Virus record (IMG/VR): IMGVR_UViG_3300047499_000113
Coordinates: 176,016-240,015 of that record
Strand: one strand, 5' to 3'
Length of the DNA: 64,000 nucleotides
Shown piece by piece: positions 4,496 through 53,213 of this stretch (position 1 is the first letter of the stretch; every line of letters starts with the position of its first letter). Both the position numbers and the translations under genes were made by a program. The notes under the pieces are model-generated. The model did not search any database. It was not told the DNA's origin and worked only from the letters and a program-made list of their open reading frames with translations.

Positions 4496-4687
4496 CTACG
4501 ATTCGTGGACTTGGCGGGCGACGCGAACGATGTATTCTTCCGTAGGTGGCGGGCCTGCGAGTGGTCCCATCCTCGCACCGCACCTCTTGCAGACGCGGAC
4601 GAGCGCGGCCATCGAAGGGTTGCCGGACTTGCGGCGCTCCGTTTTGGGGAGCTTCTGCCACTCGTGGCCAAAGTTACGCGCCGTCAC
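4496..4687 (-). CDS. Small HxW-CxxC protein ending VHES
   Basis: GTG at 4687 with GGGGAG 7 nt upstream; GHEW...CKRCG...VARQVHES. Confidence 0.6.
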   Translation of the reverse strand: MTARNFGHEWQKLPKTERRKSGNPSMAALVRVCKRCGARMGPLAGPPPTEEYIVRVARQVHES

Positions 4688-23203: not shown

Positions 23204-26200
23204 TCAGCTACAGCCGGTCGTTTGACCGCACGAAGTGCACAGGTAGCACGACCCATTGCGCTGCGTGATGCTGCCGCACCGAGCGCACGGAGGGCCACCG
23301 AGATTCTTGCGGGGAGGAACAGGCTCTTCCGCCGTAGCGACGGCCTGGATGCGTGTCGACGAATCGGGCTCCTTCGAGATTCCCTCGCGAACGTCCATTG
23401 CCGGCGGAGGAGCTTCAGACGCCTTCATCTGAGCGAGCTTCTCCTCGAGGCCCGAGTGCGAGCCGCCGTAGTAACGGACATCGAGCACCTTGAACAGGTA
23501 GTCGTACAGGCTCTTGGCGAACCTGATGTGCTTGTTCGAGGTGATGCCGGCGGGCTCGAACCTCGTATCGACGAAGCTTTGGATGAGCTTCGGCAGAGGC
23601 ACGCCATACTGAAGAGCGATGCTCATCAGCTGCGTGAATCCGTCGATGAGGCCCGAAATCGTGCTTCCTGGCTTTCCGAGCTTGAGGAATACCTCGCCCG
23701 GTCGCCCGTCCGCGTATTCGCCGACGATGATGTATCCCTTGTAGCCGTCGATCTCGAACTTGTGGCGCCAGCTGTTGACCTCGGCGGGCAGCTTCTCACG
23801 ACGTGCTCCAGCGGCCTTCGCTTCCGCGATGAGCTGGTCGACCGGAGGAGCCTTCGGCGCCGGCGCGGGCCTGATCCCTTCCTTGTCGCCGTCCTTCTTG
23901 GTAGAAAGAGGCTGCGAAGCCTTGCACCCGTCACGGTAGAGCGCGATGCACTTGAGCCCGAGCCGCCAGCTCTCCTCGTAGATCTTGGCGATTTCCTCGG
24001 CCGTGATCTCGCTCGGAAGATTGACGGTCTTGCTCATCGCGCACGTGATGAGCGGTTGTATGGCCGCCATCATCTTGATGTGCGCCATGGGCGAAAGGTA
24101 TCGACCGCCAGGTGCAGAAGGCATTGCGCAGTCGAATACTGGAAGGTGCTCGGGCTTGAGACCCGGAGCGCCTTCGATGGTGCCGTTGTCCTCGAGGGAC
24201 TTGCAGATGGTGTTGATCTGGTCTTCGGCGTAGCCGAGTCCGAGAAGCGCGTCACGTACGCCCGTGTTCACCAGGCGCAGAGAGCCTCCGCCCACCATGC
24301 TCTTGTAGCTCACGAGCGAGAACGCCGGCTCGATGCCGGTGGTGCTCATTCCCATGAGGAACGAGATGGTGCCGAGAGGCGCCTGGAGAGAAGCCTGCGA
24401 TACCGAGTAGCCGTACCTCTCACCAAGAGCGATTGCCTCGCGCCACACCTCGGCCGACGTCGGAACCACGTCGTCCCCGGTCGGAGACGACTCGAGATGC
24501 CAGCGCTTGATGATGGTCGCATCAGCTTCTTGATGCATCTTCATCACGCGGAGCATGTCCTCGCGGTTCAGCTCGAAATCCGGGAACGAGCCGACACGCG
24601 CCGCGAGCTTCGCCGCGGTGACGTAGACCATGCCCGTCATGAGCGATGCCATCTGCGCAGCTACCGCACGACCTTCGTCGGTGTCGTAACCGTAGCCGAG
24701 CTTCATCAACAGCGCTCCGAGGTCGCCGTAGTTCGTCCCGATGGGGCGCAGCTTGTGCGAGTTGTGCGCGATCTCTTCGGTCGGGTAATCCGCCTTGTCG
24801 ATGATCGCCATCTGCGAGGTCGAGAACAGGCGAACAGCCTGCTCGAAACGCGCCTTGACGAACTTGCGACCGTCGAAGAACTTCGTCAGGTTGATCGCGC
24901 ACAGGTTGCACGCCGTGTTGTCGACATGCAGGAACTCGCTGCAGTTGTGAGCCACCACCCCGTCAGCAATCAGAGAGCTCGTCTCCGGCTCCGTGATGTC
25001 ATAAACGAGGGTTTGCTCGCCTTTGTCGACGACCCTTACGACTTCATCGGTCCATTGATCACGGCCGTTGTTGTTCACGCCTTCCGGGATTTCGTCCAAA
25101 CGCGCCTGCTTGCGTGAGGAGAGGAGACCCACTTCGAGCATAAGAGATTTGAAGGTACGCAGACTCTGTCCAGTGATGACGAGATCGTTCGTTTTTTCCT
25201 TGGACGGGTAAGTCCGGACTTCCCCAGATTTGGTCGTATACGTGAACGACGGCTTATCGCCAGGACGCCGATCCTTATAAAGAGTGCTGTTGACGCCGAG
25301 GTTCAGAAGAAGAGCCTGCACTCCGCGCAGAAGTTCCAGGCTGGTGGAGCTGAAGCGAGCGTCGACGTTCTTCTTCGGCTGGATGTTGAAAGTCCCATCC
25401 GCAGAGAACAGGCCAGAGAGGAACGAGAGCTGCTCCAGTCGAGTGGAGCAAAAAACCGCGTCCATCACTTTCTTGACTGGAGCCTTCGTTCCCGGCTCGC
25501 AAGAAAGCGTGGACATTAGTTGCCAGACAGCCTTTCGGTGAATACGGACATAGTCCGGACTTTCACCCACAGAGCCGTCCTGACGCTTCAACGAGTATGG
25601 GATGTCGTTCCGTTCGAAGAACTTCGAGACGGTATCGAGGACGTCCTTGTCGTCACGACCGAACAGAAGGCCAACCTCGTGAGTGTTTCTGCAGGGGAGA
25701 GGTCGCAGAACCCAGCCGTCGCCGACGACCCAGCCGGCGAGCTTATGCCACATCAGGCGATCGTCGACAGCAGAGAAAGCTTTTTGAGCCTCCGTCGGGA
25801 GGCATGGCTCAGCACCCTTCTCAGAGAAGGCTCCCTGTCCGGCCTGAAGCATCAGGATGCTTTCATCCGTCAGATCGCGCGCTTCAACCCAGCCGTCCTT
25901 GGTCATGAGGCGATGATCATGGGTGACTTTGATGACACGGCCTCGACGCGTGTGAACCTCGACGAGGTGATGGACACCGGTCGGGAAGACGACCGCGTCC
26001 TTGAGCTGAGGACCGTCCGGAGTTTGGACGAGAGTGCGGAATGTCGGTTTATTCGAGTCAAAAGACTCGAACTCGGAGCAGAGATCCTCAATTCGCACGA
26101 GTCCATGCTCAGTGGCGATCCTAGTGTCCGGATGGAAGCACGGATTGCTCGCACGGATCGGACCACTCTTGGGAGTGGTGTGCCACCTGTTGATGGCGTC

Positions 26201-27289
26201 CGTGAACTGCACGCCAGGGTCTCCACAGACCCACGCGGCTTGAGCGATCTCGTTCCACAGCTCACGTGCCTTGTACTTGTGAACTGTCTTGCCCGAGCGG
26301 CGTTCCTTCGTTTCCCACTGCCCGTCGTCGAGCATGGCCTGCATGAAGGAGTCCGGCACCGACACTGAGTTGTTGGCCGCCTGGAATCGAATCCGCTTGT
26401 AGGCCCCATTCGGATCGTCGTACGCAGCCGAGTAGCCCGCCGCCACGAGCGCGTGAGCAAGCTTCTCCTCTTCCGCCTTGCAGCGGATGAAGCCCGGACG
26501 TCCATCGCGAGTCTGTAGCACGTCGGGATGGTCCATGTCCATCACGACCATCTTGGCCGCGTTGCGTGTGGCGCCGCCTGACTTCATCGCCTTGGCGTAG
26601 GCGTCGAGTCCTTCCATCCACGAGATTGGACCGGACGTGTACGAGCCAGACGAGATCTTCTCGTAAGAGGAACGGAGCTTCGAGATGTTGGCGCCGGAAC
26701 CAGATCCTGAACGGAAAATCTTCATCTCCGCGGTCTGATACTTCATGATGTCTTCGATGGAGTCGTTGACATCTTGGATGAAGCACGCCGAGGCCATCTG
26801 AGCGCGGCCGGCGATACCGAGATTGAACCACACAGGCGAGTTGAACGCGCCGTACTGGTGGAGAAGAGCGTAGCAAAGCTCCTCCTCGAACACCTGCGCG
26901 TCCCTGTCCGTGTTGAAGTATTTCTGCTCCTCGGCCCAGCGGCGGAGAGTCGAGCATACGCGCTGGAAGACTTGCTTGACGGAAGTCTCACGCACGCCGT
27001 TGATCACGCGGAAGTATTTATCCGCAACGACGTTGATGTTGTTCTGAGTCCACCACGCGGGCACCTCGATGTCCTTCTGAAAGAACACCACGTCGCCCTT
27101 GGCGTTGCGGATCTCAGCATCGGCACGACGCCACTCCACCTCGTCGAAAGGATGGACGCCGTCCTTCGTGAAAACACGGGGCCAGTGACCAGCTTCTTTG
27201 GCGATGCGCGCTTGCTCCGACGACAGATCAGCACGGGTCCCTTTCAGGATCGGTACCACTTGTGCTGACATTACGCTAGCGCTTGACAT
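23204..27289 (-). CDS. nrdJ: Class II (B12-dependent) ribonucleotide reductase with intein
   Basis: FNSPVW, SACF, NPC|SE, ACNLCAINL, APLGTIS, SKTVN, YRDG, C-terminal TSCPD-like region and Zn ribbon. Confidence 0.93.
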   Translation of the reverse strand: MSSASVMSAQVVPILKGTRADLSSEQARIAKEAGHWPRVFTKDGVHPFDEVEWRRADAEIRNAKGDVVFFQKDIEVPAWWTQNNINVVADKYFRVINGVRETSVKQVFQRVCSTLRRWAEEQKYFNTDRDAQVFEEELCYALLHQYGAFNSPVWFNLGIAGRAQMASACFIQDVNDSIEDIMKYQTAEMKIFRSGSGSGANISKLRSSYEKISSGSYTSGPISWMEGLDAYAKAMKSGGATRNAAKMVVMDMDHPDVLQTRDGRPGFIRCKAEEEKLAHALVAAGYSAAYDDPNGAYKRIRFQAANNSVSVPDSFMQAMLDDGQWETKERRSGKTVHKYKARELWNEIAQAAWVCGDPGVQFTDAINRWHTTPKSGPIRASNPCFHPDTRIATEHGLVRIEDLCSEFESFDSNKPTFRTLVQTPDGPQLKDAVVFPTGVHHLVEVHTRRGRVIKVTHDHRLMTKDGWVEARDLTDESILMLQAGQGAFSEKGAEPCLPTEAQKAFSAVDDRLMWHKLAGWVVGDGWVLRPLPCRNTHEVGLLFGRDDKDVLDTVSKFFERNDIPYSLKRQDGSVGESPDYVRIHRKAVWQLMSTLSCEPGTKAPVKKVMDAVFCSTRLEQLSFLSGLFSADGTFNIQPKKNVDARFSSTSLELLRGVQALLLNLGVNSTLYKDRRPGDKPSFTYTTKSGEVRTYPSKEKTNDLVITGQSLRTFKSLMLEVGLLSSRKQARLDEIPEGVNNNGRDQWTDEVVRVVDKGEQTLVYDITEPETSSLIADGVVAHNCSEFLHVDNTACNLCAINLTKFFDGRKFVKARFEQAVRLFSTSQMAIIDKADYPTEEIAHNSHKLRPIGTNYGDLGALLMKLGYGYDTDEGRAVAAQMASLMTGMVYVTAAKLAARVGSFPDFELNREDMLRVMKMHQEADATIIKRWHLESSPTGDDVVPTSAEVWREAIALGERYGYSVSQASLQAPLGTISFLMGMSTTGIEPAFSLVSYKSMVGGGSLRLVNTGVRDALLGLGYAEDQINTICKSLEDNGTIEGAPGLKPEHLPVFDCAMPSAPGGRYLSPMAHIKMMAAIQPLITCAMSKTVNLPSEITAEEIAKIYEESWRLGLKCIALYRDGCKASQPLSTKKDGDKEGIRPAPAPKAPPVDQLIAEAKAAGARREKLPAEVNSWRHKFEIDGYKGYIIVGEYADGRPGEVFLKLGKPGSTISGLIDGFTQLMSIALQYGVPLPKLIQSFVDTRFEPAGITSNKHIRFAKSLYDYLFKVLDVRYYGGSHSGLEEKLAQMKASEAPPPAMDVREGISKEPDSSTRIQAVATAEEPVPPRKNLGGPPCARCGSITQRNGSCYLCTSCGQTTGCS
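24944..26140 (-). mobile_element. 399-aa intein with LAGLIDADG homing endonuclease
   Basis: Starts CFHPDT after SNP; ends VYDI...VAHN before C-S-E; blocks LAGWVVGDG and FLSGLFSADG. Confidence 0.92.
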
Positions 27290-28190
27290 CCTTCGCCTCC
27301 TCAGACAACCGAATCACTTCCAACTCCAGACCAAAGCGCGCCCAAGGACTACCGCGTTTGTGCGCGATGTCCAGGTCGCAAAGCGTGTCGATGGACCGTT
27401 GTAGCGACTGCTTGGTCCATAGACCCTTGCGAGTTACGTACATCCGCTTGAGAACAAACGGATGGACCCCGAGAGTTATGGCGGCCCGGTCGTCGGGTGC
27501 CTTGCTCTCCGCCAGCAGCTCGAACCGCAGCTGCTGAAGTACATGACGCTGCATGTACGCGAGGACCCACCCAGTCTCATCGGTGCGCTCCTGGAGCTTG
27601 TCGAGAAAAGCGAGCGCTCTGGCGGTTTGTCCGTCGCATAACGAGTCAACAACTTCTTTCGGGGTCAGCTCGGCAGAGAAACAGAGGAGGGAGCGTGCTG
27701 CGTCCGGTGATACGACGCTACCTTTTGGCGTGACCAATGCAAGCTTGTCCACCTCTGTAGCGAGCTTACGAAGACTGCTTCCAGAGTTCACAAAAAGAGC
27801 ACCCGCTACTCTCGATAGATCTATGTTGTGCCTTTGACCCTCTTTTAGGATCCAGCCGAGCACTTCGTTGTTTTCCGGATATGACTTCAATTTTGGAAAT
27901 TTCAACGCGCGCTTGGCCTTCGGGTGCGTGAGTGGCTTCTTGCTGAGGACAATCAGCGTGTCATGCTCGTTGACGGGGAGCGCAGGCACCTCCTTAGCAT
28001 CCCAAATGACGTACGCGCGCTTTCCTCCGCCAAGGAGGCAGCACGACGACTCCTGCAGATATTCATCGAGCCCCGCTGAAGTGGCATCGAATTGCAGCAC
28101 TTCTTCAGCGAGACTGAGACGAGCCTCGTCCTGAGCGGCCCGCTCCATCAACAGCTCTTCCTCGCCACTGATGAGGACCAAGACCGGCAT
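27276..28190 (-). CDS. holA: DNA pol III delta subunit-like
   Basis: 'LISGEEELL', 'EVDKLAL', 'LGVHPF', 'LCDLDIAHKRG'; start uncertain. Confidence 0.75.
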   Translation of the reverse strand: MPVLVLISGEEELLMERAAQDEARLSLAEEVLQFDATSAGLDEYLQESSCCLLGGGKRAYVIWDAKEVPALPVNEHDTLIVLSKKPLTHPKAKRALKFPKLKSYPENNEVLGWILKEGQRHNIDLSRVAGALFVNSGSSLRKLATEVDKLALVTPKGSVVSPDAARSLLCFSAELTPKEVVDSLCDGQTARALAFLDKLQERTDETGWVLAYMQRHVLQQLRFELLAESKAPDDRAAITLGVHPFVLKRMYVTRKGLWTKQSLQRSIDTLCDLDIAHKRGSPWARFGLELEVIRLSEEAKDVKR

Positions 28191-28201
28191 GGACTGGTAG
28201 C

Positions 28202-29023
28202 TTACACCAGAGACACCAGATGGGTAGCCATTCTCAGCCAATGGATCTCGGCGCTCGCGGACGGCACGGAGAGTAGAGCGGAGCTGTATCTGAGAATCGT
28301 CACCAACTGATCGGTCGTGGCTTTCTTGAACTTCGCTGCGGTGAGCGCTGCTTCGCGACAAACGTGCGCTACGCACTCTCGTTGCAGGGGTTCTTTGGCC
28401 TCTTTGACGACCTCCGGTACGGAGTCAGTCAGTAGACTGGCCTTGCCCTCGCACGCACGCATGAGGATGTCGAACAACTCGGCGTGCTTGGTGCCGCCCT
28501 CGTTTTCGAACATAGCATGGAAGAGTCCGGGCCGTCCGCCACACAAGATGAGCGCTTTGCTGTCTTCGCCGGATCCGAAGGCGACGGCGAAGTTGCGCAT
28601 CTCCATGAGAGACAAGAGCTTCCATCGAATGGTGCAACGGAATCTCGAGCGGATCGCGGGCTGCAGGAGCCCATCGTCCGGCACCACAAACACGATGCAC
28701 GAATGATCGCCCGGCTGCTCGAGAAGCTTGAGATACGCGTCCTGCGCAGCCTCCGTCATCGTATGCGCATCATCAACGATGACGTACCTATTCGGTGACG
28801 AGAGCGGGTGCGTCTTGCAGAATTCGACCGCCTCGCGAGCCGAATCGATACTTTTGTCTGCCAGGAAGAGATCCGTCTCTGCCGTCAGCTCAGATAGGGT
28901 GTCCCTCAGGAACGTCGCTTTGCCCACGTGCGACGGACCCGTCAGGCACAGACTCCTGGCCGAGCTGTCCAGAGCCACCTTCAGCTTCGACTGCGCTGGG
29001 GAGTTGCCGAAGATTTGCGTCAA
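28202..29023 (-). CDS. holB: DNA pol III delta-prime subunit-like
   Basis: GPSHVGK, 'DDAHTMTEAAQDAYLKLLEQP', 'LQPAIRSR'. Confidence 0.8.
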   Translation of the reverse strand: MTQIFGNSPAQSKLKVALDSSARSLCLTGPSHVGKATFLRDTLSELTAETDLFLADKSIDSAREAVEFCKTHPLSSPNRYVIVDDAHTMTEAAQDAYLKLLEQPGDHSCIVFVVPDDGLLQPAIRSRFRCTIRWKLLSLMEMRNFAVAFGSGEDSKALILCGGRPGLFHAMFENEGGTKHAELFDILMRACEGKASLLTDSVPEVVKEAKEPLQRECVAHVCREAALTAAKFKKATTDQLVTILRYSSALLSVPSASAEIHWLRMATHLVSLV

Positions 29024-33837: not shown

Positions 33838-34152
33838 TTACGAGTCTACAGGCTTCCACTCCAGATACTGAGTGAGGCCCGCTAACCCAGGTCTGCCAGT
33901 CTCGTATTTCAATACCGCTCTGTGGACTTTGTAGGGACCCTCGATGTGCCGGCTCTTTCTAGAGTCACGCGGGTTCTTGAGCACGACACTGAATTCCACC
34001 ACGGTCCCTTGGCCAAGGAGCGGGAGTTCGCCCGCACGAAACTCCAGGTGCACGGGTAAATCCGTGAAAACGAAGATCGTTCGCACGTTCCCTCCGCCCG
34101 AAACGACTCCGGGCGTCTTCAGCACCATTGCTCCTTCTGCTTCACGATTCAC
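33838..34152 (-). CDS. Hypothetical protein
   Basis: 104 aa. Confidence 0.5.
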   Translation of the reverse strand: MNREAEGAMVLKTPGVVSGGGNVRTIFVFTDLPVHLEFRAGELPLLGQGTVVEFSVVLKNPRDSRKSRHIEGPYKVHRAVLKYETGRPGLAGLTQYLEWKPVDS

Positions 34153-34569: not shown

Positions 34570-35298
34570 ATGAAGAAGAACGGGCGAGGAAAGCCTCTGG
34601 ACCGGGAAGAAGTAGATCGTCACATCGACGACTGCCTCCGAAGGCTCCGGTGCGGCAAAGACGCTCCATACTTCCGCTCTCTGCTTGAGGGAATGGTTTA
34701 TCAGGGCGTAGTGCCTCTAGACCTGCTACGGAAGGTGCCCGCTCCTGCACAGGAAGCCGGCAAGACGCGCTTTGACCAGCTCTACGGGGCTGCGATGCAG
34801 CTCGTGTTCCCCGACTACAGAGAAGAGACGCTCCGGCGCTTTCTCGGTCCTGAGGCTCCCGTCACGGAGGACAAAATCTGGCGCGTCATGTTCCCCGAGA
34901 AATTCGGCATGACTCACGTGTTCATGCGCGCAGGAACTTTCCAGCAGGCGTTCGCTCTCGGATGCGACTACGCGTGTCGCGTTCACATGCGTGCGTTTGC
35001 GACGATCCCATCGGACCTCACCATTCGGGTGATGTTTGTCTCCGAGAGGGCCCTTCGTCGAATACTCGACATGCGTTGGGCGGCCAAGACTCACAAGCGA
35101 ATGCAGCTCAAGCTTGTGGGCAGGGAGTTCACGCCGCGGATGCTCAAAGGCGCGAGGCTCGCGGCGCTCGGTCATCCGGACAGCCCTATGCACTCGATAG
35201 CCAGGTACGCCGAGATGAAGGACCTCGAGAAGGTTCGAAAGTCCAAAGGACGAGTGCGTACGTCGCCGGTCGAATCGGAATCTTTTCGCAGAAAATGA
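34570..35298 (+). CDS. Hypothetical basic protein
   Basis: 242 aa; TATAAT 7 nt before the ATG. Confidence 0.65.
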   Translation: MKKNGRGKPLDREEVDRHIDDCLRRLRCGKDAPYFRSLLEGMVYQGVVPLDLLRKVPAPAQEAGKTRFDQLYGAAMQLVFPDYREETLRRFLGPEAPVTEDKIWRVMFPEKFGMTHVFMRAGTFQQAFALGCDYACRVHMRAFATIPSDLTIRVMFVSERALRRILDMRWAAKTHKRMQLKLVGREFTPRMLKGARLAALGHPDSPMHSIARYAEMKDLEKVRKSKGRVRTSPVESESFRRK

Positions 35299-35341: not shown

Positions 35342-36517
35342 ATGCAAGACGGCAAGTTCAACGTCATCATTGACGCTTTTTGGGGTTCATCTGGCAAGGG
35401 CAAGACCTCGACGTGGTTGGCCGACAAGTTTTCGGTCACCCGTGTGTCGTCTTCGAACTTCCCGAACGCCGGCCACACAGCCGCTTTCGAGGACGGGACG
35501 AAGTTCGTGGCTAAGGCCATCCCCACTGCCGCCATTCTCAAGAAGACTCGAGGCATGGGCGTCGAGTGCTTTCTTTCACCGGGTTCCGGTTTCGCGTGGG
35601 CGCAGCTCGTCAAGGAGTGGAAGGAAGCCGGCAAGCCGACCATCCGCATCCACGAACGAGCCAGCATCGTCACCGACGACCACGCAAAGCGAGAGCGTGA
35701 AGGCGCGGAGTCGACGATGCACATAGCGTCGACGATGCAGGGTTCGGCTGCGGCAATCGTGGACAAGGTGCTTCGCAAGGCGGACTGCCAGCTCGCGTGG
35801 AACACCGTCGACGAAGTGATGCGCGGATTCGAGGGCACGATGAGCCCCGAGTTCGCCGAGTCGGTTCGCGTACTCAAGGCCGACGCTTTCCGCGCAATGT
35901 CGCAGGGCGCGGTCCTCGACGAGGGCCACACGTGGCTGCACGAGGGCTCTCAGGGCTTCTCGCTCTCCATCGACCATGGCTCTCACTACCCGCACTGCAC
36001 GAGTCGAAACTGCACGGTGCAAGCGGCGCTCGATCACATGGCGATGCCGCCGCAGGTCCTCGGCGACGTCTATCTCAATCTGCGCACTCGACCCATACGC
36101 GTAGGGAACGTCGTGGACAATGGCATCCAGAAGGGTTACTCGGGCGATTTCTACCCGGACTGCAAGGAGATGACCTGGGAGCAGGTCGCGGCAGAGTCCG
36201 GGATGCCGGCGGAGGAAGCGAAGATCCTGGCCGAGCGCGAGCGCACAACGGTGACCAAGCGCATCCGCCGCGTCTGCAACTTCACCTTCGTGGGCCTGCG
36301 CGACGCCGTGCGCACCAACGGCGCCACGAAACTCTGCCTCAACTTCATCCAGTACGTCAACTGGGAAGACCGTGGCCTCAAGGGAGGCCGGGACGCCTTC
36401 GACAAGCTCTCGAAGAAGAGCCGCGCGTTCATCGATAGGGTCGAGGAGGCCGCGCAAGTGCCGGTCGTGCTCGTGGGAACCGGCGCGCTTCATGATGAAA
36501 TGATAACTCTCTTGTAG
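35342..36517 (+). CDS. purZ: PurZ-type N6-succino-2-amino-deoxyadenylate synthase (PurA paralogue)
   Basis: WGSSGKGK (Ser where PurA has the Asp of GDEGKG), PNAGHT, EGSQG.SL, YPHCTSR, PIRVG, TTVTKRIRR, LNFIQY in place of the TKLD-type motif. Confidence 0.82.
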   Translation: MQDGKFNVIIDAFWGSSGKGKTSTWLADKFSVTRVSSSNFPNAGHTAAFEDGTKFVAKAIPTAAILKKTRGMGVECFLSPGSGFAWAQLVKEWKEAGKPTIRIHERASIVTDDHAKREREGAESTMHIASTMQGSAAAIVDKVLRKADCQLAWNTVDEVMRGFEGTMSPEFAESVRVLKADAFRAMSQGAVLDEGHTWLHEGSQGFSLSIDHGSHYPHCTSRNCTVQAALDHMAMPPQVLGDVYLNLRTRPIRVGNVVDNGIQKGYSGDFYPDCKEMTWEQVAAESGMPAEEAKILAERERTTVTKRIRRVCNFTFVGLRDAVRTNGATKLCLNFIQYVNWEDRGLKGGRDAFDKLSKKSRAFIDRVEEAAQVPVVLVGTGALHDEMITLL

Positions 36518-36538
36518 CAGCGGTAATTACCGTTGCTA
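36515..36538 (+). promoter_or_regulatory. Hairpin covering the whole purZ-HNH spacer
   Basis: TAGCAGCGGT-AATT-ACCGTTGCTA; 10-bp stem with one G-U pair, including the A of the ATG. Confidence 0.6.
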
Positions 36539-36990
36539 TGATTCAAAAGAAGCGCCGCTGCAACGTCTGTAAGAAGAAGAAGACTCTCGATGAGTTCTAC
36601 AGGAACTCAAAATTCCCACTGGGCCGTACATATACGTGCAAGCTTTGTATGAATGAAGCGGGCACGGCGAGGTACCAGCGGAACAAGGAAGAAATCAATC
36701 GGAAGAGGCGAGAGGAAACCAGACGCCTGAAACTTGAAGTGGTCGATGGGTATGGCGGGCACTGCGAGTGCTGCGGTGAAGACCGGTGGCAGTTTCTCAA
36801 CATCGACCATCGCAATGGGGGCGGGACAGCTGAACGACGAAATGCCAAGAACAAGAATCCACTTTTCTTTTACAAACGGCTCGTCGCCGAGGGTTTCCCT
36901 AAAGAAAAGTTCCGTTTGCTCTGTTGGAATTGCAATTTGAGCATTGGTCTATACGGGTCGTGTCCACACACAGAAGAGAAAGTCGCATGA
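36538..36990 (+). CDS. Free-standing HNH-type endonuclease
   Basis: CNVC, CKLC, CECCG, NIDHRNG, LCWNCN; same family as 18777-19373. Confidence 0.8.
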   Translation: MIQKKRRCNVCKKKKTLDEFYRNSKFPLGRTYTCKLCMNEAGTARYQRNKEEINRKRREETRRLKLEVVDGYGGHCECCGEDRWQFLNIDHRNGGGTAERRNAKNKNPLFFYKRLVAEGFPKEKFRLLCWNCNLSIGLYGSCPHTEEKVA

Positions 36991-37572
36991 CCGACGAAGA
37001 TCTCTTCTACGATCCTGAGTCGGTCTATAACTTCAAGGTGAAGAAAGTGGCGCGCGTTCCGTCGGGTGAGAAGATGCATGACCTCGTCGTCCGAGACGGC
37101 TACGCGCTCTTTTGGGGCGAGTGGCCGTCCAACTGGACGTGGGCGCCCTTCACTCTCGACGGCGTGCGGTATAACTGCACCGAACAGCACATGATGGCAG
37201 AGAAAGCTCGGCTCTTCAAGGATGAGCAGGCTCTCCGCCACATCATGAAGGCTACGGACCCGGCGAACCAGAAACGCTATGGTCGGCAGGTAAAGGGCTT
37301 TGACGAACGTAGATGGTCGTCAGTCTGCTACGACATCGTGCTTCGTGGGAATCTCGAGAAGTATCGGCAAAACCCGGAGCTTTGCGAGAAGCTCCTGGCG
37401 ACCGGGAATCTCCATTTTGTCGAGGCTAGCCCCAAGGATAAAGTGTGGGGCATCGGTATGGACAAACATCACCCCGACGCGACAAAACCCCGGCAAATGG
37501 CTCGGCAAAAATCTGCTCGGGAAAGTGCTCGACGAAACCAGGCGTATCATCAGGCAGGAGCGTGGGTTGTGA
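36987..37572 (+). CDS. NADAR family N-glycosidase, interrupted by a 1-bp frameshift near 37484-37491
   Basis: SNW, TEQHMMAEKARLF, GRQV, EASPKDKVWGIG in one frame; the conserved WLGKNLLGK end is in the next frame. Confidence 0.8.
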
Positions 37573-38057
37573 GCCAGCTCGTGGACTTCTACGCCGGCGC
37601 CGGCAAAGACCACGCGGGCCGCAAGATCGACGACATTTGGGCTTGGGATGAAGACAAGCTCGAGAACGTTCACGACTACATCCAGTGGCTCTTCCCGAAC
37701 AGGGCCCCGAGCCGCTTCAATCCGGAGGCTCCGCTACTGACCGACGAAGACGCACAAGCTTTCAAGGAAAGCACTTACCTGTCGTCGCGAGTTCTGCGCT
37801 CGTTCGACATGATGTGCGCGTTCTATCGCGTTGGCTCCATGCAGTGCAAGCGTGCAGGCGTGAACGAGGGCCCGCCGTACTGGTGGGACAGCTTCGCGCA
37901 TTCGCACAATTGGCTGCGGATGACCCGCATCATGCTCTGCATGACCGAGGTCGGCTACCAAGACAACGCAAAAACTTTTCTCGAGTGCATCGAGAAAGCG
38001 ACTCTTCCGGACAGCAAAACGCGGCTCTTTTGGCGAGCCGCAGCGGGCGTGAAATGA
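37569..38057 (+). CDS. OGFr N-terminal-like domain protein
   Basis: LENVHDYIQWLFP, HNWLRMTRI; GTGA overlap with the NADAR stop. Confidence 0.8.
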   Translation: MSQLVDFYAGAGKDHAGRKIDDIWAWDEDKLENVHDYIQWLFPNRAPSRFNPEAPLLTDEDAQAFKESTYLSSRVLRSFDMMCAFYRVGSMQCKRAGVNEGPPYWWDSFAHSHNWLRMTRIMLCMTEVGYQDNAKTFLECIEKATLPDSKTRLFWRAAAGVK

Positions 38058-38187: not shown

Positions 38188-38460
38188 ATGAGCCGAGACA
38201 TGCAGAACGAGGCGCGTGTTTTTGGCGATGGGGACGTGACCATCGTCGTCAACATGACCTCGGCCAGCGCTCGCGTTTACGTGGGAACGCAGCAGGTGGG
38301 TTATCTGCAGAAGCTCAACCTATCGCTCGACCTCGAGAATCCGTCGCCGCAGCTCGAATTCGTCTTTCCGCAGTCATATGACTCCGGCGTCAACACACGC
38401 ATCGAGGAGCAGGTTCGCGCGGTTCGGCAACACGTGCCGTGGGCGAAGATTATTCGCTGA
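38188..38460 (+). CDS. Hypothetical protein
   Basis: 90 aa. Confidence 0.55.
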   Translation: MSRDMQNEARVFGDGDVTIVVNMTSASARVYVGTQQVGYLQKLNLSLDLENPSPQLEFVFPQSYDSGVNTRIEEQVRAVRQHVPWAKIIR

Positions 38461-39019
38461 CCTGGTCCTTCTTCTTACGCTTGAGATGAATACCGATTTG
38501 GTCAGGATTCTCGATCATGTAACGGTGGCACGACGCGAAATAACCGGGAAGCGGCTGCGCTGCGTCCCTTCGCATCAGCGCTTCGAGAATCGTCATTCCT
38601 CCGGCATCTGACCAAAGCCACTCTTCCGTAATGGGCACATCCGGCTTCTGCTGGCTCCAGACGTTCCCGTAAGGGAACATCATCAAAACGTATTCCTTCT
38701 TGTCAAAGTGCGGAGAGGGGCTAGGGACGAACTCCTCCTTGCGCTTGATGGACAAGTAGACTCCCGCCGGCAGGGTTACTTGAGCTTCTGGCGTCACCGT
38801 CACCCAACGCTTGATGCTCATCCACTTTGTCTCGGGCGTCTTGAGCTTTGCTCTCTTGCGGCAAGCGAGAGAGCAGTTGTAAAGAGCGGAAGGAGATAGT
38901 CCGCTTTCCCACGGACGAAAAGACTTCGGGACTTCCCGGAAAACGTGCAGTGCAGGGAAGAACGGAATCTGGATCGCCGCGACTGCGTGCTGTACTCTCG
39001 CCAACTCTTCAGAATTCAT
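38450..39019 (-). CDS. Hypothetical protein
   Basis: 189 aa. Confidence 0.55.
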   Translation of the reverse strand: MNSEELARVQHAVAAIQIPFFPALHVFREVPKSFRPWESGLSPSALYNCSLACRKRAKLKTPETKWMSIKRWVTVTPEAQVTLPAGVYLSIKRKEEFVPSPSPHFDKKEYVLMMFPYGNVWSQQKPDVPITEEWLWSDAGGMTILEALMRRDAAQPLPGYFASCHRYMIENPDQIGIHLKRKKKDQVSE

Positions 39020-39036: not shown

Positions 39037-40371
39037 ATGAGCGACATCAAGACAGAAGTCTTTTGCCTCACAGCCCCGGACGGCCGTCTGTTGCCACCTG
39101 CTGTACAGGCAACGGTACTCGCCAAGTATTCCCGATCGCCACTGTCGGCGCGGCAAATCGTCGCGTCGCTGACGGAGGAAGAGGCGGACAAGTTCCAGGA
39201 GAAGTGGGTCATCGGGTACAACCACTCGAGCGTCGCTGAGTTGGCTGTTTTGCCGATTTGCTTCGAGGGCGTGTCCATCGTCGCTTCCAAATTCCTGGAA
39301 TCCTTCCAAAGGCCCGGGTACTCGGAAAAGAGTACACGTTACCAGGTCTTCTCTCGCGATTCCTTCGTCACGCCACCTGGTGCGCCGGCGACAATGCAGA
39401 AGTTTGCCGCCAGGTTCTACGACGCGTACGAAAGCCTGTATCCGAAGGTCCTGCAGCGTGTGGCCAAGCTCACCGGCAAGGACCCGGAAGACCGATTGGT
39501 CAAGGCTCGAACATTCGACAACGTCAGGTATCTGCTGCCCGCCGGGACCGGCACGAACCTAGCCTGGGTCGGCAATGCGAGAGACGCTCGCTACCTCATT
39601 TCCGCAGCTCGAGGTCACACCAACCCCGAGATCCGGATGCTCGGCGATATGGCAGCGAAAGCCGTGGCAGAGATGTGCCCGGTGTTCGTGCAGAAGGCCG
39701 ATGCGGACTCATTCGAACCGCCGATTCGGAGCCTCGGCAATCTCAGCCCGAAGTTCGACTTCTCCAACCCGAACTGGTACGTCGACTTGCATCGCAAGCA
39801 TCTATTGCCAGACTCGGCGCTCGTGCAGAAGTCCTTCGAGGCAGCGATAGCTGACCGCCACGGCATGAGTTGGTCTGCTTTCTCGAAGCTCATGGAGTCC
39901 CGTGGACCCCGAGCGGTACCCAGGGTGTTCCGCACAATCCAGCTCTCGTTCGACATCATGATGGACTACGGAGCGTATCGCGACCTGCAGCGGCACCGCA
40001 GGTGTGAGCAATACGCCGAGCCCCTGCACCCCAACTACGGATTCCTCGTCCCGGACGACATTCTCGGGACCGAACTCGAGCAGGAGTACCGGGCGGCAAT
40101 GCAAGCGGCCCACGCGTACGACGACGAAGCGGTCGTGCACGACCCCGACCTGATGCAGTACATGGTTCCACTCGGATACCTGCACCGGTCGGTCTTCGAC
40201 ATGGACGCTCAGGAGGTTTATTACCTGTCCGAGTTGAGGACGCAGCCTCAAGGCCACATCTCGTACCGGCGAGTGGCGTACGAACTGAGTCGTGTGGCGG
40301 CGGCCAGGCTCCCTCAGGTCTTCCAGTGGTGCCGGGCCATCAAGCCGGAGGCAATCGGCGAACACAAGTGA
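39037..40371 (+). CDS. thyX: Flavin-dependent thymidylate synthase, long two-domain type
   Basis: GYNHSSVAE, SEKSTRY, RYLLP, RDLQRHR, ELRT..QGH.SYR. Confidence 0.85.
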   Translation: MSDIKTEVFCLTAPDGRLLPPAVQATVLAKYSRSPLSARQIVASLTEEEADKFQEKWVIGYNHSSVAELAVLPICFEGVSIVASKFLESFQRPGYSEKSTRYQVFSRDSFVTPPGAPATMQKFAARFYDAYESLYPKVLQRVAKLTGKDPEDRLVKARTFDNVRYLLPAGTGTNLAWVGNARDARYLISAARGHTNPEIRMLGDMAAKAVAEMCPVFVQKADADSFEPPIRSLGNLSPKFDFSNPNWYVDLHRKHLLPDSALVQKSFEAAIADRHGMSWSAFSKLMESRGPRAVPRVFRTIQLSFDIMMDYGAYRDLQRHRRCEQYAEPLHPNYGFLVPDDILGTELEQEYRAAMQAAHAYDDEAVVHDPDLMQYMVPLGYLHRSVFDMDAQEVYYLSELRTQPQGHISYRRVAYELSRVAAARLPQVFQWCRAIKPEAIGEHK

Positions 40372-44018: not shown

Positions 44019-44690
44019 ATGCAAGACGACGACAAAGTGGCACTCATCGACCTGGACGGAACAATCGCCGACTACGACACGGCGATGAAGAAAGAGCTGG
44101 ACTTCCTGCGCTCTCCTGGAGAGCCTCCGGTGATCGACAGGTACATGGACAGGGAAGCCAACGAAGTGCGTGCTGCAAGAAGGGCTTCTACGCGAGCGGT
44201 GGCGCACGAGGCGCCTCATCTCGAGCGCCGACGCAAGCTCATCCAGCAAAAGCCCGGATTCTGGCGCGGACTCCCTCGTCATCCGCTCGGATTCCAGGTA
44301 ATCGAAGAGATACGCGCCCTGCGCTTCACGCTCGGCGTGCTCACGAAGGGTCCGGGCAAGACTCCGGGAGCGTGGACCGAGAAGTTCGAGTGGTGTCAGG
44401 CGAACATCCCCGACGCCGACGTGACCATCACGCAGAACAAGGCGCGCGTCTACGGGCGCGTCCTGTTCGATGACTGGCCCGACTACTACATCCCGTGGCT
44501 CGTCCACCGTCCGCGCGGACTCGTCATCTCGGTCGCTCAGCCGTGGAATGCGAACATGGACGAGATTCTTGCTGCGGCGAAGAAGGCGGGAGTCGAGACT
44601 CCGCGCATCATTCGCTACGATGGGACGAATCTCGAAGAGTTGAAAGCGCAGCTGCACTGGGCGTACAATCGTCCGTCACGGAGCGTCTGA
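44019..44690 (+). CDS. HAD-family 5'(3')-deoxyribonucleotidase-like
   Basis: IDLDGTIAD, FW..L, EK.EW, LFDD, QPWN. Confidence 0.8.
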   Translation: MQDDDKVALIDLDGTIADYDTAMKKELDFLRSPGEPPVIDRYMDREANEVRAARRASTRAVAHEAPHLERRRKLIQQKPGFWRGLPRHPLGFQVIEEIRALRFTLGVLTKGPGKTPGAWTEKFEWCQANIPDADVTITQNKARVYGRVLFDDWPDYYIPWLVHRPRGLVISVAQPWNANMDEILAAAKKAGVETPRIIRYDGTNLEELKAQLHWAYNRPSRSV

Positions 44691-48546: not shown

Positions 48547-49146
48547 ATGCCCGGCGAGCAGCAAGAAGGCCAGGTTGATGAAGCACAGCCCGCGGTTGAG
48601 GTCGCAGGAAAGGACCTCATCCTCCATCTCGGAGGCGGCGGAGGGAGCGATAGCACCCCACCGGATCCGAAGGCCCAGAGACTCAAGTCATGGGCGAACA
48701 TCATCGCAACGACGGCAGCGCTGGTCACGGCCGTTGGAGCACTCATCAGACCGCAAGACCAGACGGCGACGAAGAACGCGTACGAGCAGCTCAAGACGTC
48801 GATTGAACAGACCAATCAAAACGTGCAGAGCAATCACGACGATGTAGTCGCATTGCACAACTACTTGCAGGGGTACTTCGCTTCGAACGCACAGGTCTCT
48901 CTGCCGCCGCTCTCCGGCTCGAGCGGAGGTGGGTCGAGCGGGTTCAGCAGTGGCTCAGGCGGTCCTGCTCCTTCGACTTCGTCCACAGCCAGGAGACCAC
49001 CGCCGTACACCGCAGCGCCCACCACTACGGCGACGATGGCTTACGCGCCGTCACAGGCATCGCCAGCGTTCCCGCTGCCGCCCGTCGCGTCCAACGTCGC
49101 TCCGCCTCCCCTGCCGCCATTCGATTCAGTCGCGGCTAAGAAGTAG
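48547..49146 (+). CDS. Single-TM, coiled-coil, Pro/Ser-rich protein (possible lysis accessory)
   Basis: One hydrophobic helix; near the endolysin. Confidence 0.5.
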   Translation: MPGEQQEGQVDEAQPAVEVAGKDLILHLGGGGGSDSTPPDPKAQRLKSWANIIATTAALVTAVGALIRPQDQTATKNAYEQLKTSIEQTNQNVQSNHDDVVALHNYLQGYFASNAQVSLPPLSGSSGGGSSGFSSGSGGPAPSTSSTARRPPPYTAAPTTTATMAYAPSQASPAFPLPPVASNVAPPPLPPFDSVAAKK

Positions 49147-49713
49147 GTCCTGACCGCATCGGAGCGCGTGCACGATCTCGATGAGGCGTGGCCATGTGTG
49201 AATCCGCTTGAACCCACGTGACGTCCTGTTGTATGTCATATCCCACAGGAGTGCGTGGGACTTCGGGTGCCACTCTTCCCATTTCTGAATCGTCTTGGGA
49301 CGATCATCGACGAGAAGGTCGCCACGTACGTGGTGCTTCTTGAACGCATGCACAATGTCGTCGTGCGCCGCGGTGTAGAATCTGTGCAGCCACTCTTGGC
49401 GCTCACGCATCCATGTCGGATTGTGAGGATGAGGAGTCGTAACGAACACGACTTCACAAATCTGTTTCAGCTCGCGCACCGCTTCCACGGATCCGGGCTG
49501 GGGGAGGATCCGCGATGCGAAGCCAGGCTTGGCGATCGCAGCATTTAGAGCGTCCTTCATCTCCTGAGTCGGCAGGATGTCGGTCACGTCCCACGTGACG
49601 AAGTCCTCGAGCTTGAGGTTGAGGCCGAACATCTCATTCGCTACGTTCCGAGCCTCGGAATGGAAATCGCCCAGCGGTCCGTCAACATCGAGTAGGAGAA
49701 CTACGTCGCGCAT
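49126..49713 (-). CDS. HAD-family 5'(3')-deoxyribonucleotidase-like
   Basis: LDVDGPLGDF, VTTP, WL, LVDDRP, YN. Confidence 0.8.
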   Translation of the reverse strand: MRDVVLLLDVDGPLGDFHSEARNVANEMFGLNLKLEDFVTWDVTDILPTQEMKDALNAAIAKPGFASRILPQPGSVEAVRELKQICEVVFVTTPHPHNPTWMRERQEWLHRFYTAAHDDIVHAFKKHHVRGDLLVDDRPKTIQKWEEWHPKSHALLWDMTYNRTSRGFKRIHTWPRLIEIVHALRCGQDLLLSRD

Positions 49714-52561: not shown

Positions 52562-53213
52562 GGCGTTTCGCCCGTCACTCGACGACCCGAAAGTCTACTT
52601 CCAAAAGGCACTCGGTTTCGCCCGCACGCACTACGCGGACGAAATGGAACAAATCGCGTCGGTCAAACACGAACTAGTTGACCCAACGCATTTCTTCCGC
52701 GAGTACACGTGGGTTGTACACGCCACGGGGTTCTCGGCCAAGGCAGTAGGCAAGTTCATGCCTCGTTTGGTCGAGGCTTACGGCCCATACAACGAGCTTG
52801 CCGAGCGGAGTCTCGAGGATGCCATCGGGCGCGTCAAGGTGGTATGCAACAATCCGCAGAAAATAAAGGCAGTACATACTACATCCCGCCTACTTCGCGA
52901 TGGCATCAAAGTCCACGGATGGGACGAGTTCAAGAAGCAGAAGCTCTCGACTCCCGACCTGCTCAAGAAGCTGCCCTATGTTGGTCCGGTGACGTGCTTC
53001 CATCTCGCACGCAACATCGGGCTCCTCGACTGCGTGAAGCCCGACCTGCACCTCATTCGGCTCGCTGAGCATTGGAAATTCAAGGACTGCACAGCGATGT
53101 GCAAGGCCATGGGCGAAGGATCGGGACTGCCGCTGGGCATCGTCGACCTGGTGGTATGGTACGCCGCGTCCACCTTCGGAACTCTTGAGGTGCGCAAGGA
53201 AGGGCAGCGCTAA
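52527..53213 (+). CDS. HhH-GPD superfamily DNA glycosylase-like
   Basis: HhH 'LKKLPYVGPVT' followed by 'VKPDLHLIR'. Confidence 0.7.
   Translation: MEPHKSLDSSIEAFRPSLDDPKVYFQKALGFARTHYADEMEQIASVKHELVDPTHFFREYTWVVHATGFSAKAVGKFMPRLVEAYGPYNELAERSLEDAIGRVKVVCNNPQKIKAVHTTSRLLRDGIKVHGWDEFKKQKLSTPDLLKKLPYVGPVTCFHLARNIGLLDCVKPDLHLIRLAEHWKFKDCTAMCKAMGEGSGLPLGIVDLVVWYAASTFGTLEVRKEGQR

What the first reader, a model, noticed from the sequence alone, without database searches (positions are those of the whole stretch)
35342..36517. PurZ signature suggests a 2-aminoadenine (Z) genome in a jumbo-type replicon
Seen: WGSSGKGK, PIRVG, TTVTKRIRR, LNFIQY. Established: PurZ has Ser in place of the catalytic Asp of PurA (GDEGKG) and makes the dZMP precursor from dGMP. 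Characterised Z phages (S-2L, phiVC8) pair it with DatZ, MazZ-type and often DpoZ genes. Here the neighbours are an unknown gene, an HNH nuclease and NADAR. No DatZ, MazZ or family-A polymerase is recognisable in 64 kb, while Pol III-type accessory subunits are present. Inference: Z-DNA made by a different replisome, partial substitution, or a new PurZ role.
Basis: partly seen in the sequence, partly recalled or inferred. Interest (0 to 1): 0.85.

Follow-up and report, generated by a model that had tools for sequence, protein, structure and literature searches.

The report
PurZ-type gene in huge phages
A 240-kb phage genome carries a real, divergent version of the enzyme that makes the DNA base 2-aminoadenine (Z). 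It is a conserved gene of a large uncultured lineage of 240–445 kb phages that has none of the usual helper genes, so these may be the first giant phages with Z-DNA, made by an undescribed route.

Summary
ORF 35342–36517 (+, 391 aa) is intact and carries all four motifs. Its best matches are PurZ by PHROG, NCBIfam, PDB sequence and predicted fold. It has Ser at the PurA Asp13 position and keeps 14 of 17 S-2L PurZ pocket residues, including the ATP-type N-F-x-Q-Y motif. In a tree it sits on the PurZ side, not with PurZ0 or PurA, in its own well-supported subclade.

It is at most 35% identical to any deposited phage PurZ and scores below NCBI's PurZ cut-off (188 against 300 bits).

The window is the last 64 kb of a 240,015-bp IMG/VR phage contig. 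More than 120 close homologue clusters exist, many on 200–445 kb contigs.

No DatZ, MazZ/DUF550, DutZ/DmtZ, DpoZ, PrimPol or DnaE was found in the window, in 96% of the contig, or within ±10 kb of PurZ in 88 related loci. An orphan ORF (34570–35298) lies directly upstream in 45 of 50 close loci. ThyX, RNR, clamp-loader subunits, a dNMP-kinase-like gene and a DHH gene recur nearby.

PurZ chemistry is likely. Whether the DNA contains Z, fully or partly, remains untested. This is a new variant of a known kind, with high interest.

The parts
35342..36517 (+). PurZ-type succino-amino-deoxyadenylate synthase, new huge-phage subclade (391 aa)
   Evidence: Family and structure matches. Discriminating residues. 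Tree. AF2 pLDDT 88 with nearest folds 6FM1 and 7ODX.
34570..35298 (+). Orphan ORF (242 aa) conserved directly upstream of PurZ; candidate new pathway partner
   Evidence: It is adjacent in 45/50 loci at >=60% PurZ identity, and in 33/38 of those with enough flank. It is 59% and 50% identical in the 393-kb and 274-kb relatives. The family has 131 clusters, found on huge-phage contigs up to 439 kb and on many short contigs, with no Pfam domain. There is no match in deposited phages. AF2 pTM is 0.70, with no fold match in PDB or BFVD.
33838..34152 (-). Conserved small ORF (104 aa) upstream of the pair
   Evidence: Present in 38/50 close loci at about -1.1 kb. No family hit.
38450..39019 (-). Conserved 189-aa ORF between PurZ and ThyX, function unknown
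   Evidence: Present in 37/50 close loci. No Pfam, PHROG or NCBIfam hit. The atlas search gave nothing useful.
39037..40371 (+). ThyX flavin-dependent thymidylate synthase
   Evidence: Pfam Thy1 3.8e-32. Present in 34/50 close loci about 1 kb downstream.
53213..54157 (+). dNMP-kinase-like P-loop protein (weak call); candidate dZMP/dNMP kinase
   Evidence: Pfam DNMK E=0.003, N-terminal P-loop only. No PDB sequence match. Homologues lie within 10 kb of PurZ in 21/50 close loci.
54154..55134 (+). DHH/DHHA1 phosphoesterase (RecJ/NrnA-like)
   Evidence: Pfam DHHA1 4e-08. Weak NCBIfam RecJ/NrnA hits. Within 10 kb of PurZ in 16/50 close loci.
49126..49713 (-). NT5C-family 5'(3')-deoxyribonucleotidase
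   Evidence: Pfam NT5C 8.1e-27. PDB 3BWV 6e-10. Near PurZ in only 6/50 loci.
44019..44690 (+). Second, weak NT5C-like protein
   Evidence: Precomputed faint NT5C hit. Present in 4/50 loci.
4674..5576 (-). Inosine-uridine-type nucleoside hydrolase
   Evidence: Pfam IU_nuc_hydro 1.3e-13. Not seen near PurZ in any related locus.
23204..27271 (-). Class II ribonucleotide reductase with LAGLIDADG intein
   Evidence: Pfam hits. Present in 25/50 close loci.
27276..29023 (-). Pol III delta and delta' clamp-loader subunits
   Evidence: Present in 25-26/50 close loci.
8333..9754 (-). Pol III gamma/tau-like clamp-loader ATPase
   Evidence: Pfam DNA_pol3_delta2 3.3e-20 plus AAA. At most 34% identical to any deposited phage.
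36538..38057 (+). HNH endonuclease and NADAR-OGFr_N gene: variable insert, not part of the conserved module
   Evidence: HNH is present in 1/50 and NADAR in 11/50 close loci.

Best explanation
The ORF encodes a functional PurZ-type enzyme of a previously undescribed subclade. It most likely condenses dGMP with aspartate, using ATP (or dATP) as phosphate donor, to give N6-succino-2-amino-2'-deoxyadenylate. Host PurB would convert this to dZMP. A kinase would then take it to dZTP; the recurrent phage dNMP-kinase-like gene is a candidate, together with host Gmk/Ndk. The phage replisome would incorporate it; only the bacterial-type clamp loader and clamp are identified, not the polymerase. The gene is a conserved core gene of a lineage of huge uncultured phages (240-445 kb). 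That lineage lacks every known dATP/dGTP-clearing partner (DatZ, MazZ/DUF550, DutZ/DmtZ, DUF5664-like) and every known Z polymerase (DpoZ, PrimPol). Instead it keeps an orphan ORF directly upstream. Shown: PurZ identity, pocket residues, fold, clade, synteny, and absence of known partners. Inferred: substrate use, that Z enters the DNA, and that the upstream orphan or the NT5C/DHH/kinase genes supply the missing pool-control steps.
For: PurZ models are the best hit in every library: PHROG 1211 at 6.8e-55, NCBIfam NF038379 at 1.8e-55, and PDB phiVC8/S-2L PurZ at 8e-34 and 8e-28. Ser replaces PurA Asp13 in the query and in 134/134 metagenomic relatives, and T262, F295 and Y298 (phiVC8 numbering) are kept. 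These are the residues that bioRxiv 10.1101/2025.10.22.683976 names as discriminating dZ contigs. Of the 17 S-2L pocket residues listed in PMC8342488, 14 are kept. These include the PurZ-unique S23/T273/Q308, V241, and the loop insertion that excludes a ribose 2'-OH. The AF2 model has pLDDT 88 and pTM 0.90, with nearest folds 6FM1 and 7ODX (TM 0.84) ahead of PurZ0 7VF6 (0.78) and bacterial PurA (about 0.65). In the tree, PurZ0 branches first and the query clade (SH-aLRT 99) lies on the PurZ side (90). Near-sister members sit with classic Z accessories: S-2L-type PrimPol plus a Wayne gp50-like gene in L110, and a DutZ/DmtZ-like gene abutting PurZ in L136, L145 and L146. This supports Z chemistry for the wider clade. 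The gene is conserved at 64-92% identity in more than 120 clusters on contigs up to 445 kb, so it is under selection. S-2L PurZ itself consumes dATP (PMC8342488), which offers partial dATP depletion without DatZ.
Against: The score is below NCBI's curated PurZ cut-off (188 against 300 bits). No dATPase or dGTP pyrophosphatase of any known Z type is present in the window, in 96% of the contig, or in 88 neighbourhoods. In known systems dATP exclusion is needed for full replacement. No DNA polymerase was identified at all. The pocket variants A129, H218 and A382 and W at position 12 (as in E. coli PurA) are untested. The tree used a single PurA outgroup and a quick search. There is no direct evidence on DNA composition.
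Confidence: 0.55

Rival explanations
1. The enzyme does PurZ chemistry but the genome is only partly substituted. Alternatively, dZ nucleotides serve mainly to perturb pools (consuming dGMP and dATP) or as transient anti-defence molecules, without complete A-to-Z replacement.
For: No DatZ, MazZ, DutZ or DmtZ analogue was detected anywhere examined. In E. coli, PurZ-containing clusters without a matching replisome give only 7-50% dZ (PMC12944874, Table 3). A/T-containing hexamers are strongly purged from 230 kb of the contig: GAGCTC 4 against 120 expected, AGGCCT 1 against 45, AGTACT 0 against 28.5. This shows the DNA still faces restriction at such sites.
Against: True Z phages also purge A-containing sites, for example phiVC8 GATC 4 against 152, so avoidance does not discriminate. 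An orphan partner gene is tightly conserved and could supply dATP exclusion. NT5C, DHH and kinase genes are available.
Confidence: 0.3
2. It is an auxiliary purine-metabolism gene that works like archaeal short PurA (IMP + Asp to adenylosuccinate) and boosts AMP/dATP supply for a very large genome.
For: The fold and sequence are also close to P. horikoshii PurA: 5K7X at 2e-26 with TM 0.86. Trp at phiVC8 position 12 matches E. coli PurA. The gene lies in a general nucleotide-supply module with RNR and ThyX.
Against: Ser, not Asp, sits at the catalytic base position in all 134 relatives. Thr replaces the PurA Gly at 262. The GTP-specifying K331/D333 are replaced by F and Q. All PurA equivalog models score far below their cut-offs. 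The tree places it with PurZ.
Confidence: 0.07
3. It is a PurZ-like enzyme with a new substrate or role, for example making a precursor for another DNA hypermodification together with the sugar, radical-SAM and methyltransferase genes elsewhere on the contig.
For: The contig carries a cluster with glycosyltransferases, an epimerase, UDP-glucose dehydrogenase, a B12 radical-SAM enzyme and a methyltransferase at record positions about 95-113 kb. The orphan partner has unknown function. The protein has subclade-specific insertions at residues 156-169, 286-298 and 345-361.
Against: That cluster lies about 100 kb from PurZ and could equally serve virion or host glycan modification. The dGMP, Asp and ATP pocket residues are almost all conserved.
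Confidence: 0.08

Closest known systems
PurZ of Vibrio phage phiVC8 and cyanophage S-2L (PDB 6FM1, 7ODX)
   Same: Same fold (TM 0.84). Ser in place of PurA Asp13, the T262/T273 contact, the N-F-x-N/Q-Y adenine pocket, V241 with the following loop insertion, and the same side of the tree.
   Different: Only 31-32% identical. About 40-50 residues longer, with insertions at residues 69-72, 156-169, 286-298 and 345-361. W instead of F/Y at position 12. Below the NCBIfam PurZ cut-off. No adjacent datZ/mazZ, no DpoZ or PrimPol, and a genome 5-10 times larger.
PurZ0 of Arthrobacter phage Wayne and Gordonia phages (PDB 7VF6)
   Same: Ser at the catalytic position; adenylosuccinate synthetase fold.
   Different: PurZ0 has GSE(A)KG and lacks the F/Y adenine motif. 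It is only 26-27% identical, branches outside the clade, and has TM 0.78. PurZ0 genomes always carry dutZ (PMC12884076); none is present here.
PurA (E. coli; short archaeal form of P. horikoshii, PDB 5K7X)
   Same: Common fold, P-loop, IMP/dGMP phosphate-binding Arg143 and aspartate-binding Arg305 equivalents.
   Different: Asp13 becomes Ser, Gly298 becomes Thr, and K331/D333 become Phe/Gln. All PurA equivalog HMMs score far below their cut-offs.
Flavobacterium phage MaF61 ORF141 (168 kb, cultured)
   Same: This is the largest deposited phage I found with the same GSSGKGK and NF..Y signature. It falls on the PurZ side of the tree.
   Different: 27.5% identical, 447 aa, on a long unresolved branch. 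It sits between scaffold and terminase genes. The paper describing it does not mention the gene or DNA modification.

Membership tests
PurZ (succino-amino-deoxyadenylate synthase) | Adenylosuccinate-synthetase fold and domain | tested here: met
   PF00709 4.7e-31. AF2 model TM 0.84 to 6FM1 and 7ODX.
PurZ (succino-amino-deoxyadenylate synthase) | Ser replaces the catalytic Asp13 of PurA | tested here: met
   S16 lies in WGSSGKG. Ser is present in 134/134 relatives.
PurZ (succino-amino-deoxyadenylate synthase) | Pocket for the 2-amino group and deoxyribose of dGMP (S-2L S23, T273, R280, V241 plus loop insertion) | tested here: met
   S16, T302, R309, V254 and the NVVDNGIQK insertion are present. 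14/17 pocket residues are identical. This is by alignment only.
PurZ (succino-amino-deoxyadenylate synthase) | ATP-type base pocket (N305, F306, Q308/N297, Y298) instead of PurA's K331/D333 | tested here: met
   N334, F335, Q337 and Y338 are present.
PurZ (succino-amino-deoxyadenylate synthase) | Phylogenetic placement with characterised PurZ, apart from PurZ0 and PurA | tested here: met
   PurZ-side bipartition SH-aLRT 90; own subclade 99. Quick search with a single PurA outgroup.
PurZ (succino-amino-deoxyadenylate synthase) | Score above NCBIfam NF038379 curated cut-off (300 bits) | tested here: not met
   188.3 bits. It is the best model but sub-threshold.
PurZ (succino-amino-deoxyadenylate synthase) | Z-cluster synteny: datZ and mazZ/DUF550 within about 3 kb | tested here: not met
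   None in the window, in 96% of the contig, or in 88 loci at ±10 kb.
PurZ (succino-amino-deoxyadenylate synthase) | Catalyses dGMP + Asp + ATP to dSMP; dZ present in virion DNA | not testable with these tools
   This needs an enzyme assay and LC-MS or nanopore analysis of the DNA.
PurZ0 | GSE(A/G)KG P-loop, a divergent NTP-base motif lacking the PurZ Tyr298 equivalent, dutZ/dmtZ in the genome, and clade membership | tested here: not met
   The motifs differ. PurZ0 branches outside. No dUTPase or NDT homologue was found.
PurA (adenylosuccinate synthetase) | Catalytic Asp13 and the GTP-specifying (S/T)KxD motif; equivalog HMM cut-offs | tested here: not met
   Ser16 and LNFIQY are present instead. 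TIGR00184 scores 121 against a cut-off of 395, and NF003295 scores 163 against 368.

The most novel reading that the evidence does not exclude
A widespread lineage of huge phages (240-445 kb) has fully Z-substituted genomes made by a pathway that shares only PurZ with known Z phages. In this reading the orphan upstream ORF is a new kind of dATP-excluding or dGMP-supplying enzyme. A polymerase that works with a bacterial-type clamp and clamp loader, and is neither PolA nor PrimPol, incorporates dZTP.
Probability: 0.3. Interest if true: 0.9.

Novelty: new variant of a known kind. Interest (0 to 1): 0.7.

Why it matters
All characterised Z-genome phages are sipho- or podoviruses; the reference genomes fetched here (S-2L, phiVC8, Wayne, Ghobes) are 39-45 kb. 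They share PurZ plus a dATPase or dGTPase and usually DpoZ or PrimPol (PMC12884076; PMC8599892). If this lineage makes Z-DNA, three things would follow:

- The base would be extended to giant phages.
- At least one new enzyme for keeping adenine out of DNA would be revealed.
- A clamp-dependent replisome able to copy Z-DNA would be identified, which is useful for synthetic biology.

If the lineage does not make Z-DNA, it would show that PurZ chemistry has a second biological use. Either way, the more than 120 homologue clusters and the orphan partner gene give a concrete test set. A cultured 168-kb Flavobacterium phage (MaF61) with the same signature offers an immediate experimental handle.

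Tried and rejected
1. Direct homology search for Z partners. I ran phmmer with S-2L DatZ, MazZ and PrimPol, with phiVC8 DatZ, p26, DpoZ and neighbours, with Wayne DutZ-DmtZ, gp50, gp51, DpoZ and PrimPol, and with E. coli DnaE. Targets were six-frame translations of the window (DnaE was not in that run), of every walked locus and of 88 related loci. Only PurZ hit, apart from a few distant loci.

2. Walking the contig. This took 11 encoding-contig look-ups and 7 IMG/VR scans and covered record positions 9,713-240,015. No polymerase, HD, MazG, dUTPase or NDT domain was found. The first 9.7 kb were not reached. Small ORFs in 9.7-75 kb were tested only by phmmer, not Pfam.

3. Large ORFs without Pfam hits next to the replication module were searched against PDB sequences. 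Only an intein signal came back.

4. The fold of the upstream orphan has no match in PDB (best E 0.74) or BFVD (best E 0.31). The ESM atlas gave nothing useful.

5. Restriction-site avoidance as a proxy for unmodified A. The contig strongly purges GAGCTC, AGGCCT and AGTACT. However, phiVC8 and S-2L also purge A-containing sites. Per-enzyme dZ sensitivity for SacI and StuI was not available in the papers. I rejected this test as non-discriminating.

6. Megablast of 12 kb around the gene against deposited phages gave no match.

7. I considered NT5C plus nucleoside hydrolase as a DmtZ-like dAMP-destroying route. They are rarely or never near PurZ in relatives (6/50, 4/50 and 0/88), so this remains only a weak idea.

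8. The '-4 nt' median distance refers to stop-to-stop ORF segments, not to start codons. In the window the real gap between the orphan's stop and the PurZ ATG is 43 nt.

Full report
**Observation.** It matches Pfam Adenylsucc_synt at 4.7e-31 and PHROG 1211, '2-aminooxy adenylosuccinate synthetase', at 6.8e-55. Among solved structures its best sequence matches are phiVC8 PurZ (6FM1/6FKO, 8e-34) and S-2L PurZ (7ODX, 8e-28). The short archaeal PurA of P. horikoshii follows at 2e-26, with PurZ0 (7VF6) at 7.5e-11. The neighbours are as stated: an unknown ORF upstream, then an HNH/endonuclease VII gene and a NADAR-OGFr_N gene downstream.

**What the replicon is.** The protein is encoded on ENA ERZ12295052 scaffold_120_c1, which is IMGVR_UViG_3300047499_000113 and is 240,015 bp long. 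The window is its last 64 kb, record positions 176016-240015. A codon-usage-trained gene call plus Pfam shows the window is a replication and nucleotide-metabolism block. It contains:

- a nucleoside hydrolase, a sigma-like factor, a FEN exonuclease and a gamma/tau-like clamp loader;
- a DnaG-like primase, a PD-(D/E)XK nuclease, a metallophosphoesterase and RecD2;
- an NAD-ligase split across opposite strands, and a class II RNR with an intein;
- Pol III delta and delta', ThyX, two NT5C-like nucleotidases, a dNMP-kinase-like protein and a DHH phosphoesterase.

The rest of the contig holds baseplate J, Ig-like and giant structural ORFs. It is therefore a tailed jumbo phage. Megablast found no deposited relative, and its clamp loader is at most 34% identical to any deposited phage.

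**Is it PurZ?** Two recent papers define the discriminators. The metaGPA preprint (10.1101/2025.10.22.683976) lists phiVC8 F12, S14 and T262 for the dGMP 2-amino pocket, and F295 and Y298 for the ATP adenine. Czernecki et al. (PMC8342488) list the S-2L pocket. The query has W/S/T/F/Y at the five phiVC8 positions. Ser is present in 134 of 134 metagenomic relatives.

- Of 17 S-2L pocket residues, 14 are identical. These include the three PurZ-unique substrate contacts (S23, T273, Q308), R146, R240, R280, V241, and the loop insertion after V241 that pushes Val against C2' and excludes ribonucleotides.
- The differences are A129, H218 and A382.
- E. coli PurA has D, G, K and D at the key positions.
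- An AF2 model built on a clade alignment is confident (pLDDT 88, pTM 0.90). Its nearest solved folds are 6FM1 and 7ODX (TM 0.84), ahead of PurZ0 7VF6 (0.78) and bacterial PurA (about 0.65).
- In an IQ-TREE of 85 sequences rooted on E. coli PurA, PurZ0 (Wayne, Ghobes) branches first. The query's clade (SH-aLRT 99) lies on the PurZ side (90). It is separate from the characterised phiVC8/S-2L/Acinetobacter/ZP6/BCSR129 subclade (99).
- Against this, NCBIfam's dedicated PurZ model is the best hit but scores 188 bits against a curated cut-off of 300. All PurA equivalogs are much further below theirs.
- Identity to any deposited phage PurZ is at most 35%.

I therefore file it as a PurZ-type enzyme of a new subclade, not as a routine family member.

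**How widespread it is.** The word-indexed search returned 2665 homologues. The top 120 clusters are 63-92% identical to the query. Many lie on contigs of 200-445 kb, including 183, 302, 308, 330, 393, 399, 429, 436 and 445 kb. The exhaustive search of representatives clustered at 50% identity gave 2266 hits at E<=1e-3. All 150 listed scored higher than known PurZ does. Characterised PurZ is therefore a small corner of a large family in which the Ser residue is universal.

**Partners.** No homologue of DatZ, MazZ, phiVC8 p26, DpoZ, PrimPol, DutZ-DmtZ or Wayne gp50/gp51 exists in any frame of the window. Bulk Pfam and PHROG scans of 32 further unknown ORFs found only a peptide deformylase, an SbcC-like ATPase and a clamp-like PHROG. 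I then walked the contig leftward with 11 look-ups and 7 IMG/VR scans to record position 9,713, which is 96% coverage. No DNA polymerase of any family turned up, and no HD, MazG/DUF550, dUTPase or NDT domain (with precomputed Pfam; with phmmer and Pfam on large ORFs). Relatives sit on 274-445 kb contigs, so this contig may be partial and absence from the whole genome is not proven.

**Neighbourhoods.** Scans of IMG/VR, JGI metagenomes and GTDB genomes gave 88 loci, some redundant. None has a DatZ-, MazZ-, DpoZ- or DnaE-like gene within ±10 kb. Among the 50 loci whose PurZ is at least 60% identical to the query:

| Neighbour | Loci out of 50 |
|---|---|
| Upstream orphan ORF (34570-35298), directly upstream | 45 (33 of 38 with enough flank) |
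| 104-aa ORF | 38 |
| 189-aa ORF | 37 |
| 510-aa ORF | 35 |
| ThyX | 34 |
| Pol III delta' | 26 |
| Pol III delta | 25 |
| RNR | 25 |
| dNMP-kinase-like gene | 21 |
| DHH phosphoesterase | 16 |
| NADAR | 11 |
| HNH | 1 |

HNH and NADAR are variable inserts. The orphan family has 131 clusters, found on huge-phage contigs up to 439 kb and on many short contigs, with no Pfam domain. It has no match in deposited phages. It folds with pTM 0.70 but has no structural neighbour in PDB or BFVD. Its invariant Arg/Asp/Glu-rich columns are compatible with an enzyme, but that is inference.

More distant members of the wider clade do sit with classic Z accessories:

- L110 (58% identical) has an S-2L-type PrimPol (7e-29) and a Wayne gp50-like gene.
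- L136 and the myxobacterial chromosomes L145 (Sorangium sp. So ce131) and L146 (Chondromyces apiculatus) have a DutZ/DmtZ-like gene abutting the PurZ-like gene.

This supports Z chemistry for the wider clade. It suggests the huge-phage lineage lost or replaced its partners.

**Mechanism.** The most likely scheme is as follows.

1. PurZ converts dGMP + Asp + ATP/dATP to dSMP.
2. Host PurB gives dZMP.
3. The phage dNMP-kinase-like protein, or host Gmk/Ndk, gives dZTP.
4. A clamp-dependent replisome incorporates it.

dGMP could come from host DNA breakdown, since nucleases and a DHH exonuclease are present. dATP could be lowered by PurZ's own use of dATP, which was shown for S-2L PurZ (PMC8342488), by NT5C-type nucleotidases, or by the orphan. 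Steps after the PurZ reaction are inferred. I put PurZ chemistry at about 0.8, substantial Z in the DNA at about 0.5, and complete replacement at about 0.3.

**A test that failed to discriminate.** In 230 kb of the contig, GAGCTC (4 against 120 expected), AGGCCT (1 against 45) and AGTACT (0 against 28.5) are almost purged. Known Z phages also purge A-containing sites: phiVC8 GATC is 4 against 152, and S-2L AGGCCT is 15 against 36. In addition, 47% of restriction enzymes still cut dZ-DNA (PMC12944874). This result therefore says nothing either way.

**Novelty.** Full-text searches for PurZ or 2-aminoadenine combined with jumbo, huge phages or DnaE found no report of such a system. The 2026 NAR survey of NCBI viruses describes seven groups of PurZ/PurZ0 phages, all with DatZ/MazZ/DUF550 or DutZ/DmtZ/DUF5664. 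The searchable library lacks many subscription papers, so prior mention elsewhere cannot be excluded. I rate this a new variant of a known kind, with interest 0.7.

Noticed in passing
window 19419-20099 (-) and 21226-22389 (+): The NAD-dependent DNA ligase is split into two genes on opposite strands. HhH+BRCT lies on the minus strand, and adenylation+OB on the plus strand about 1.1 kb away.
   Followed up: no
P0121, P0122, P0124, P0129, P0132 (homologues of the query): Several PurZ-type homologues are 750-1197 aa long because of one or two intein-like insertions at the conserved NAGH and HEGSQG motifs. Junctions end in ...HN.
   Followed up: partly
L145 (Sorangium sp. So ce131 chromosome, NZ_CP150455.1, about 9.77 Mb) and L146 (Chondromyces apiculatus DSM 436): Myxobacterial chromosomes carry a PurZ-signature gene (42-44% identical, LNFA[NQ]Y) with a DutZ/DmtZ-like gene directly downstream. 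This could be a prophage or a bacterial Z-type cluster.
   Followed up: partly
contig record 9,713-240,015 (window plus L016-L061): GAGCTC (4 against 120 expected), AGGCCT (1 against 45) and AGTACT (0 against 28.5) are almost absent. This implies strong restriction pressure at these sites. The 274-kb relative instead purges CTCGAG (0 against 30.5).
   Followed up: partly
L027/L028, contig record about 95-113 kb: A cluster of three large glycosyltransferases, an NAD-epimerase, UDP-glucose dehydrogenase, a B12-binding radical-SAM enzyme and a Methyltransf_21 protein. It may act on the virion, on a glycan or on DNA.
   Followed up: no
L008:5983-7326 (Flavobacterium phage MaF61, PQ858689.1, 168 kb): A cultured large phage has a 447-aa gene with the PurZ signature (GSSGKGK, T, NF..Y) between scaffold and terminase genes. 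The paper that describes the phage does not mention it.
   Followed up: partly
window 36987-38057 (+): A NADAR domain is fused to an OGFr_N-like domain. It is present in only 11/50 related loci, so it is a variable insert next to PurZ.
   Followed up: no
window 23204-27271 (-) and L021:17642-20446: The class II RNR carries a LAGLIDADG intein. A second 934-aa ORF outside the window also has an intein/LAGLIDADG signal in an otherwise unidentifiable host protein.
   Followed up: no
one of the 32 ORFs of alignment A2 (window): A phage-encoded peptide deformylase is present (Pfam 1.6e-44, PHROG 2890). I did not determine which ORF it is.
   Followed up: no
L023:9428-9964 and L023:5523-6017 (contig record about 145-150 kb): An RNA 2'-phosphotransferase (PTS_2-RNA) gene and a faint Acb1-like hit, possibly for RNA repair or anti-defence.
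   Followed up: no
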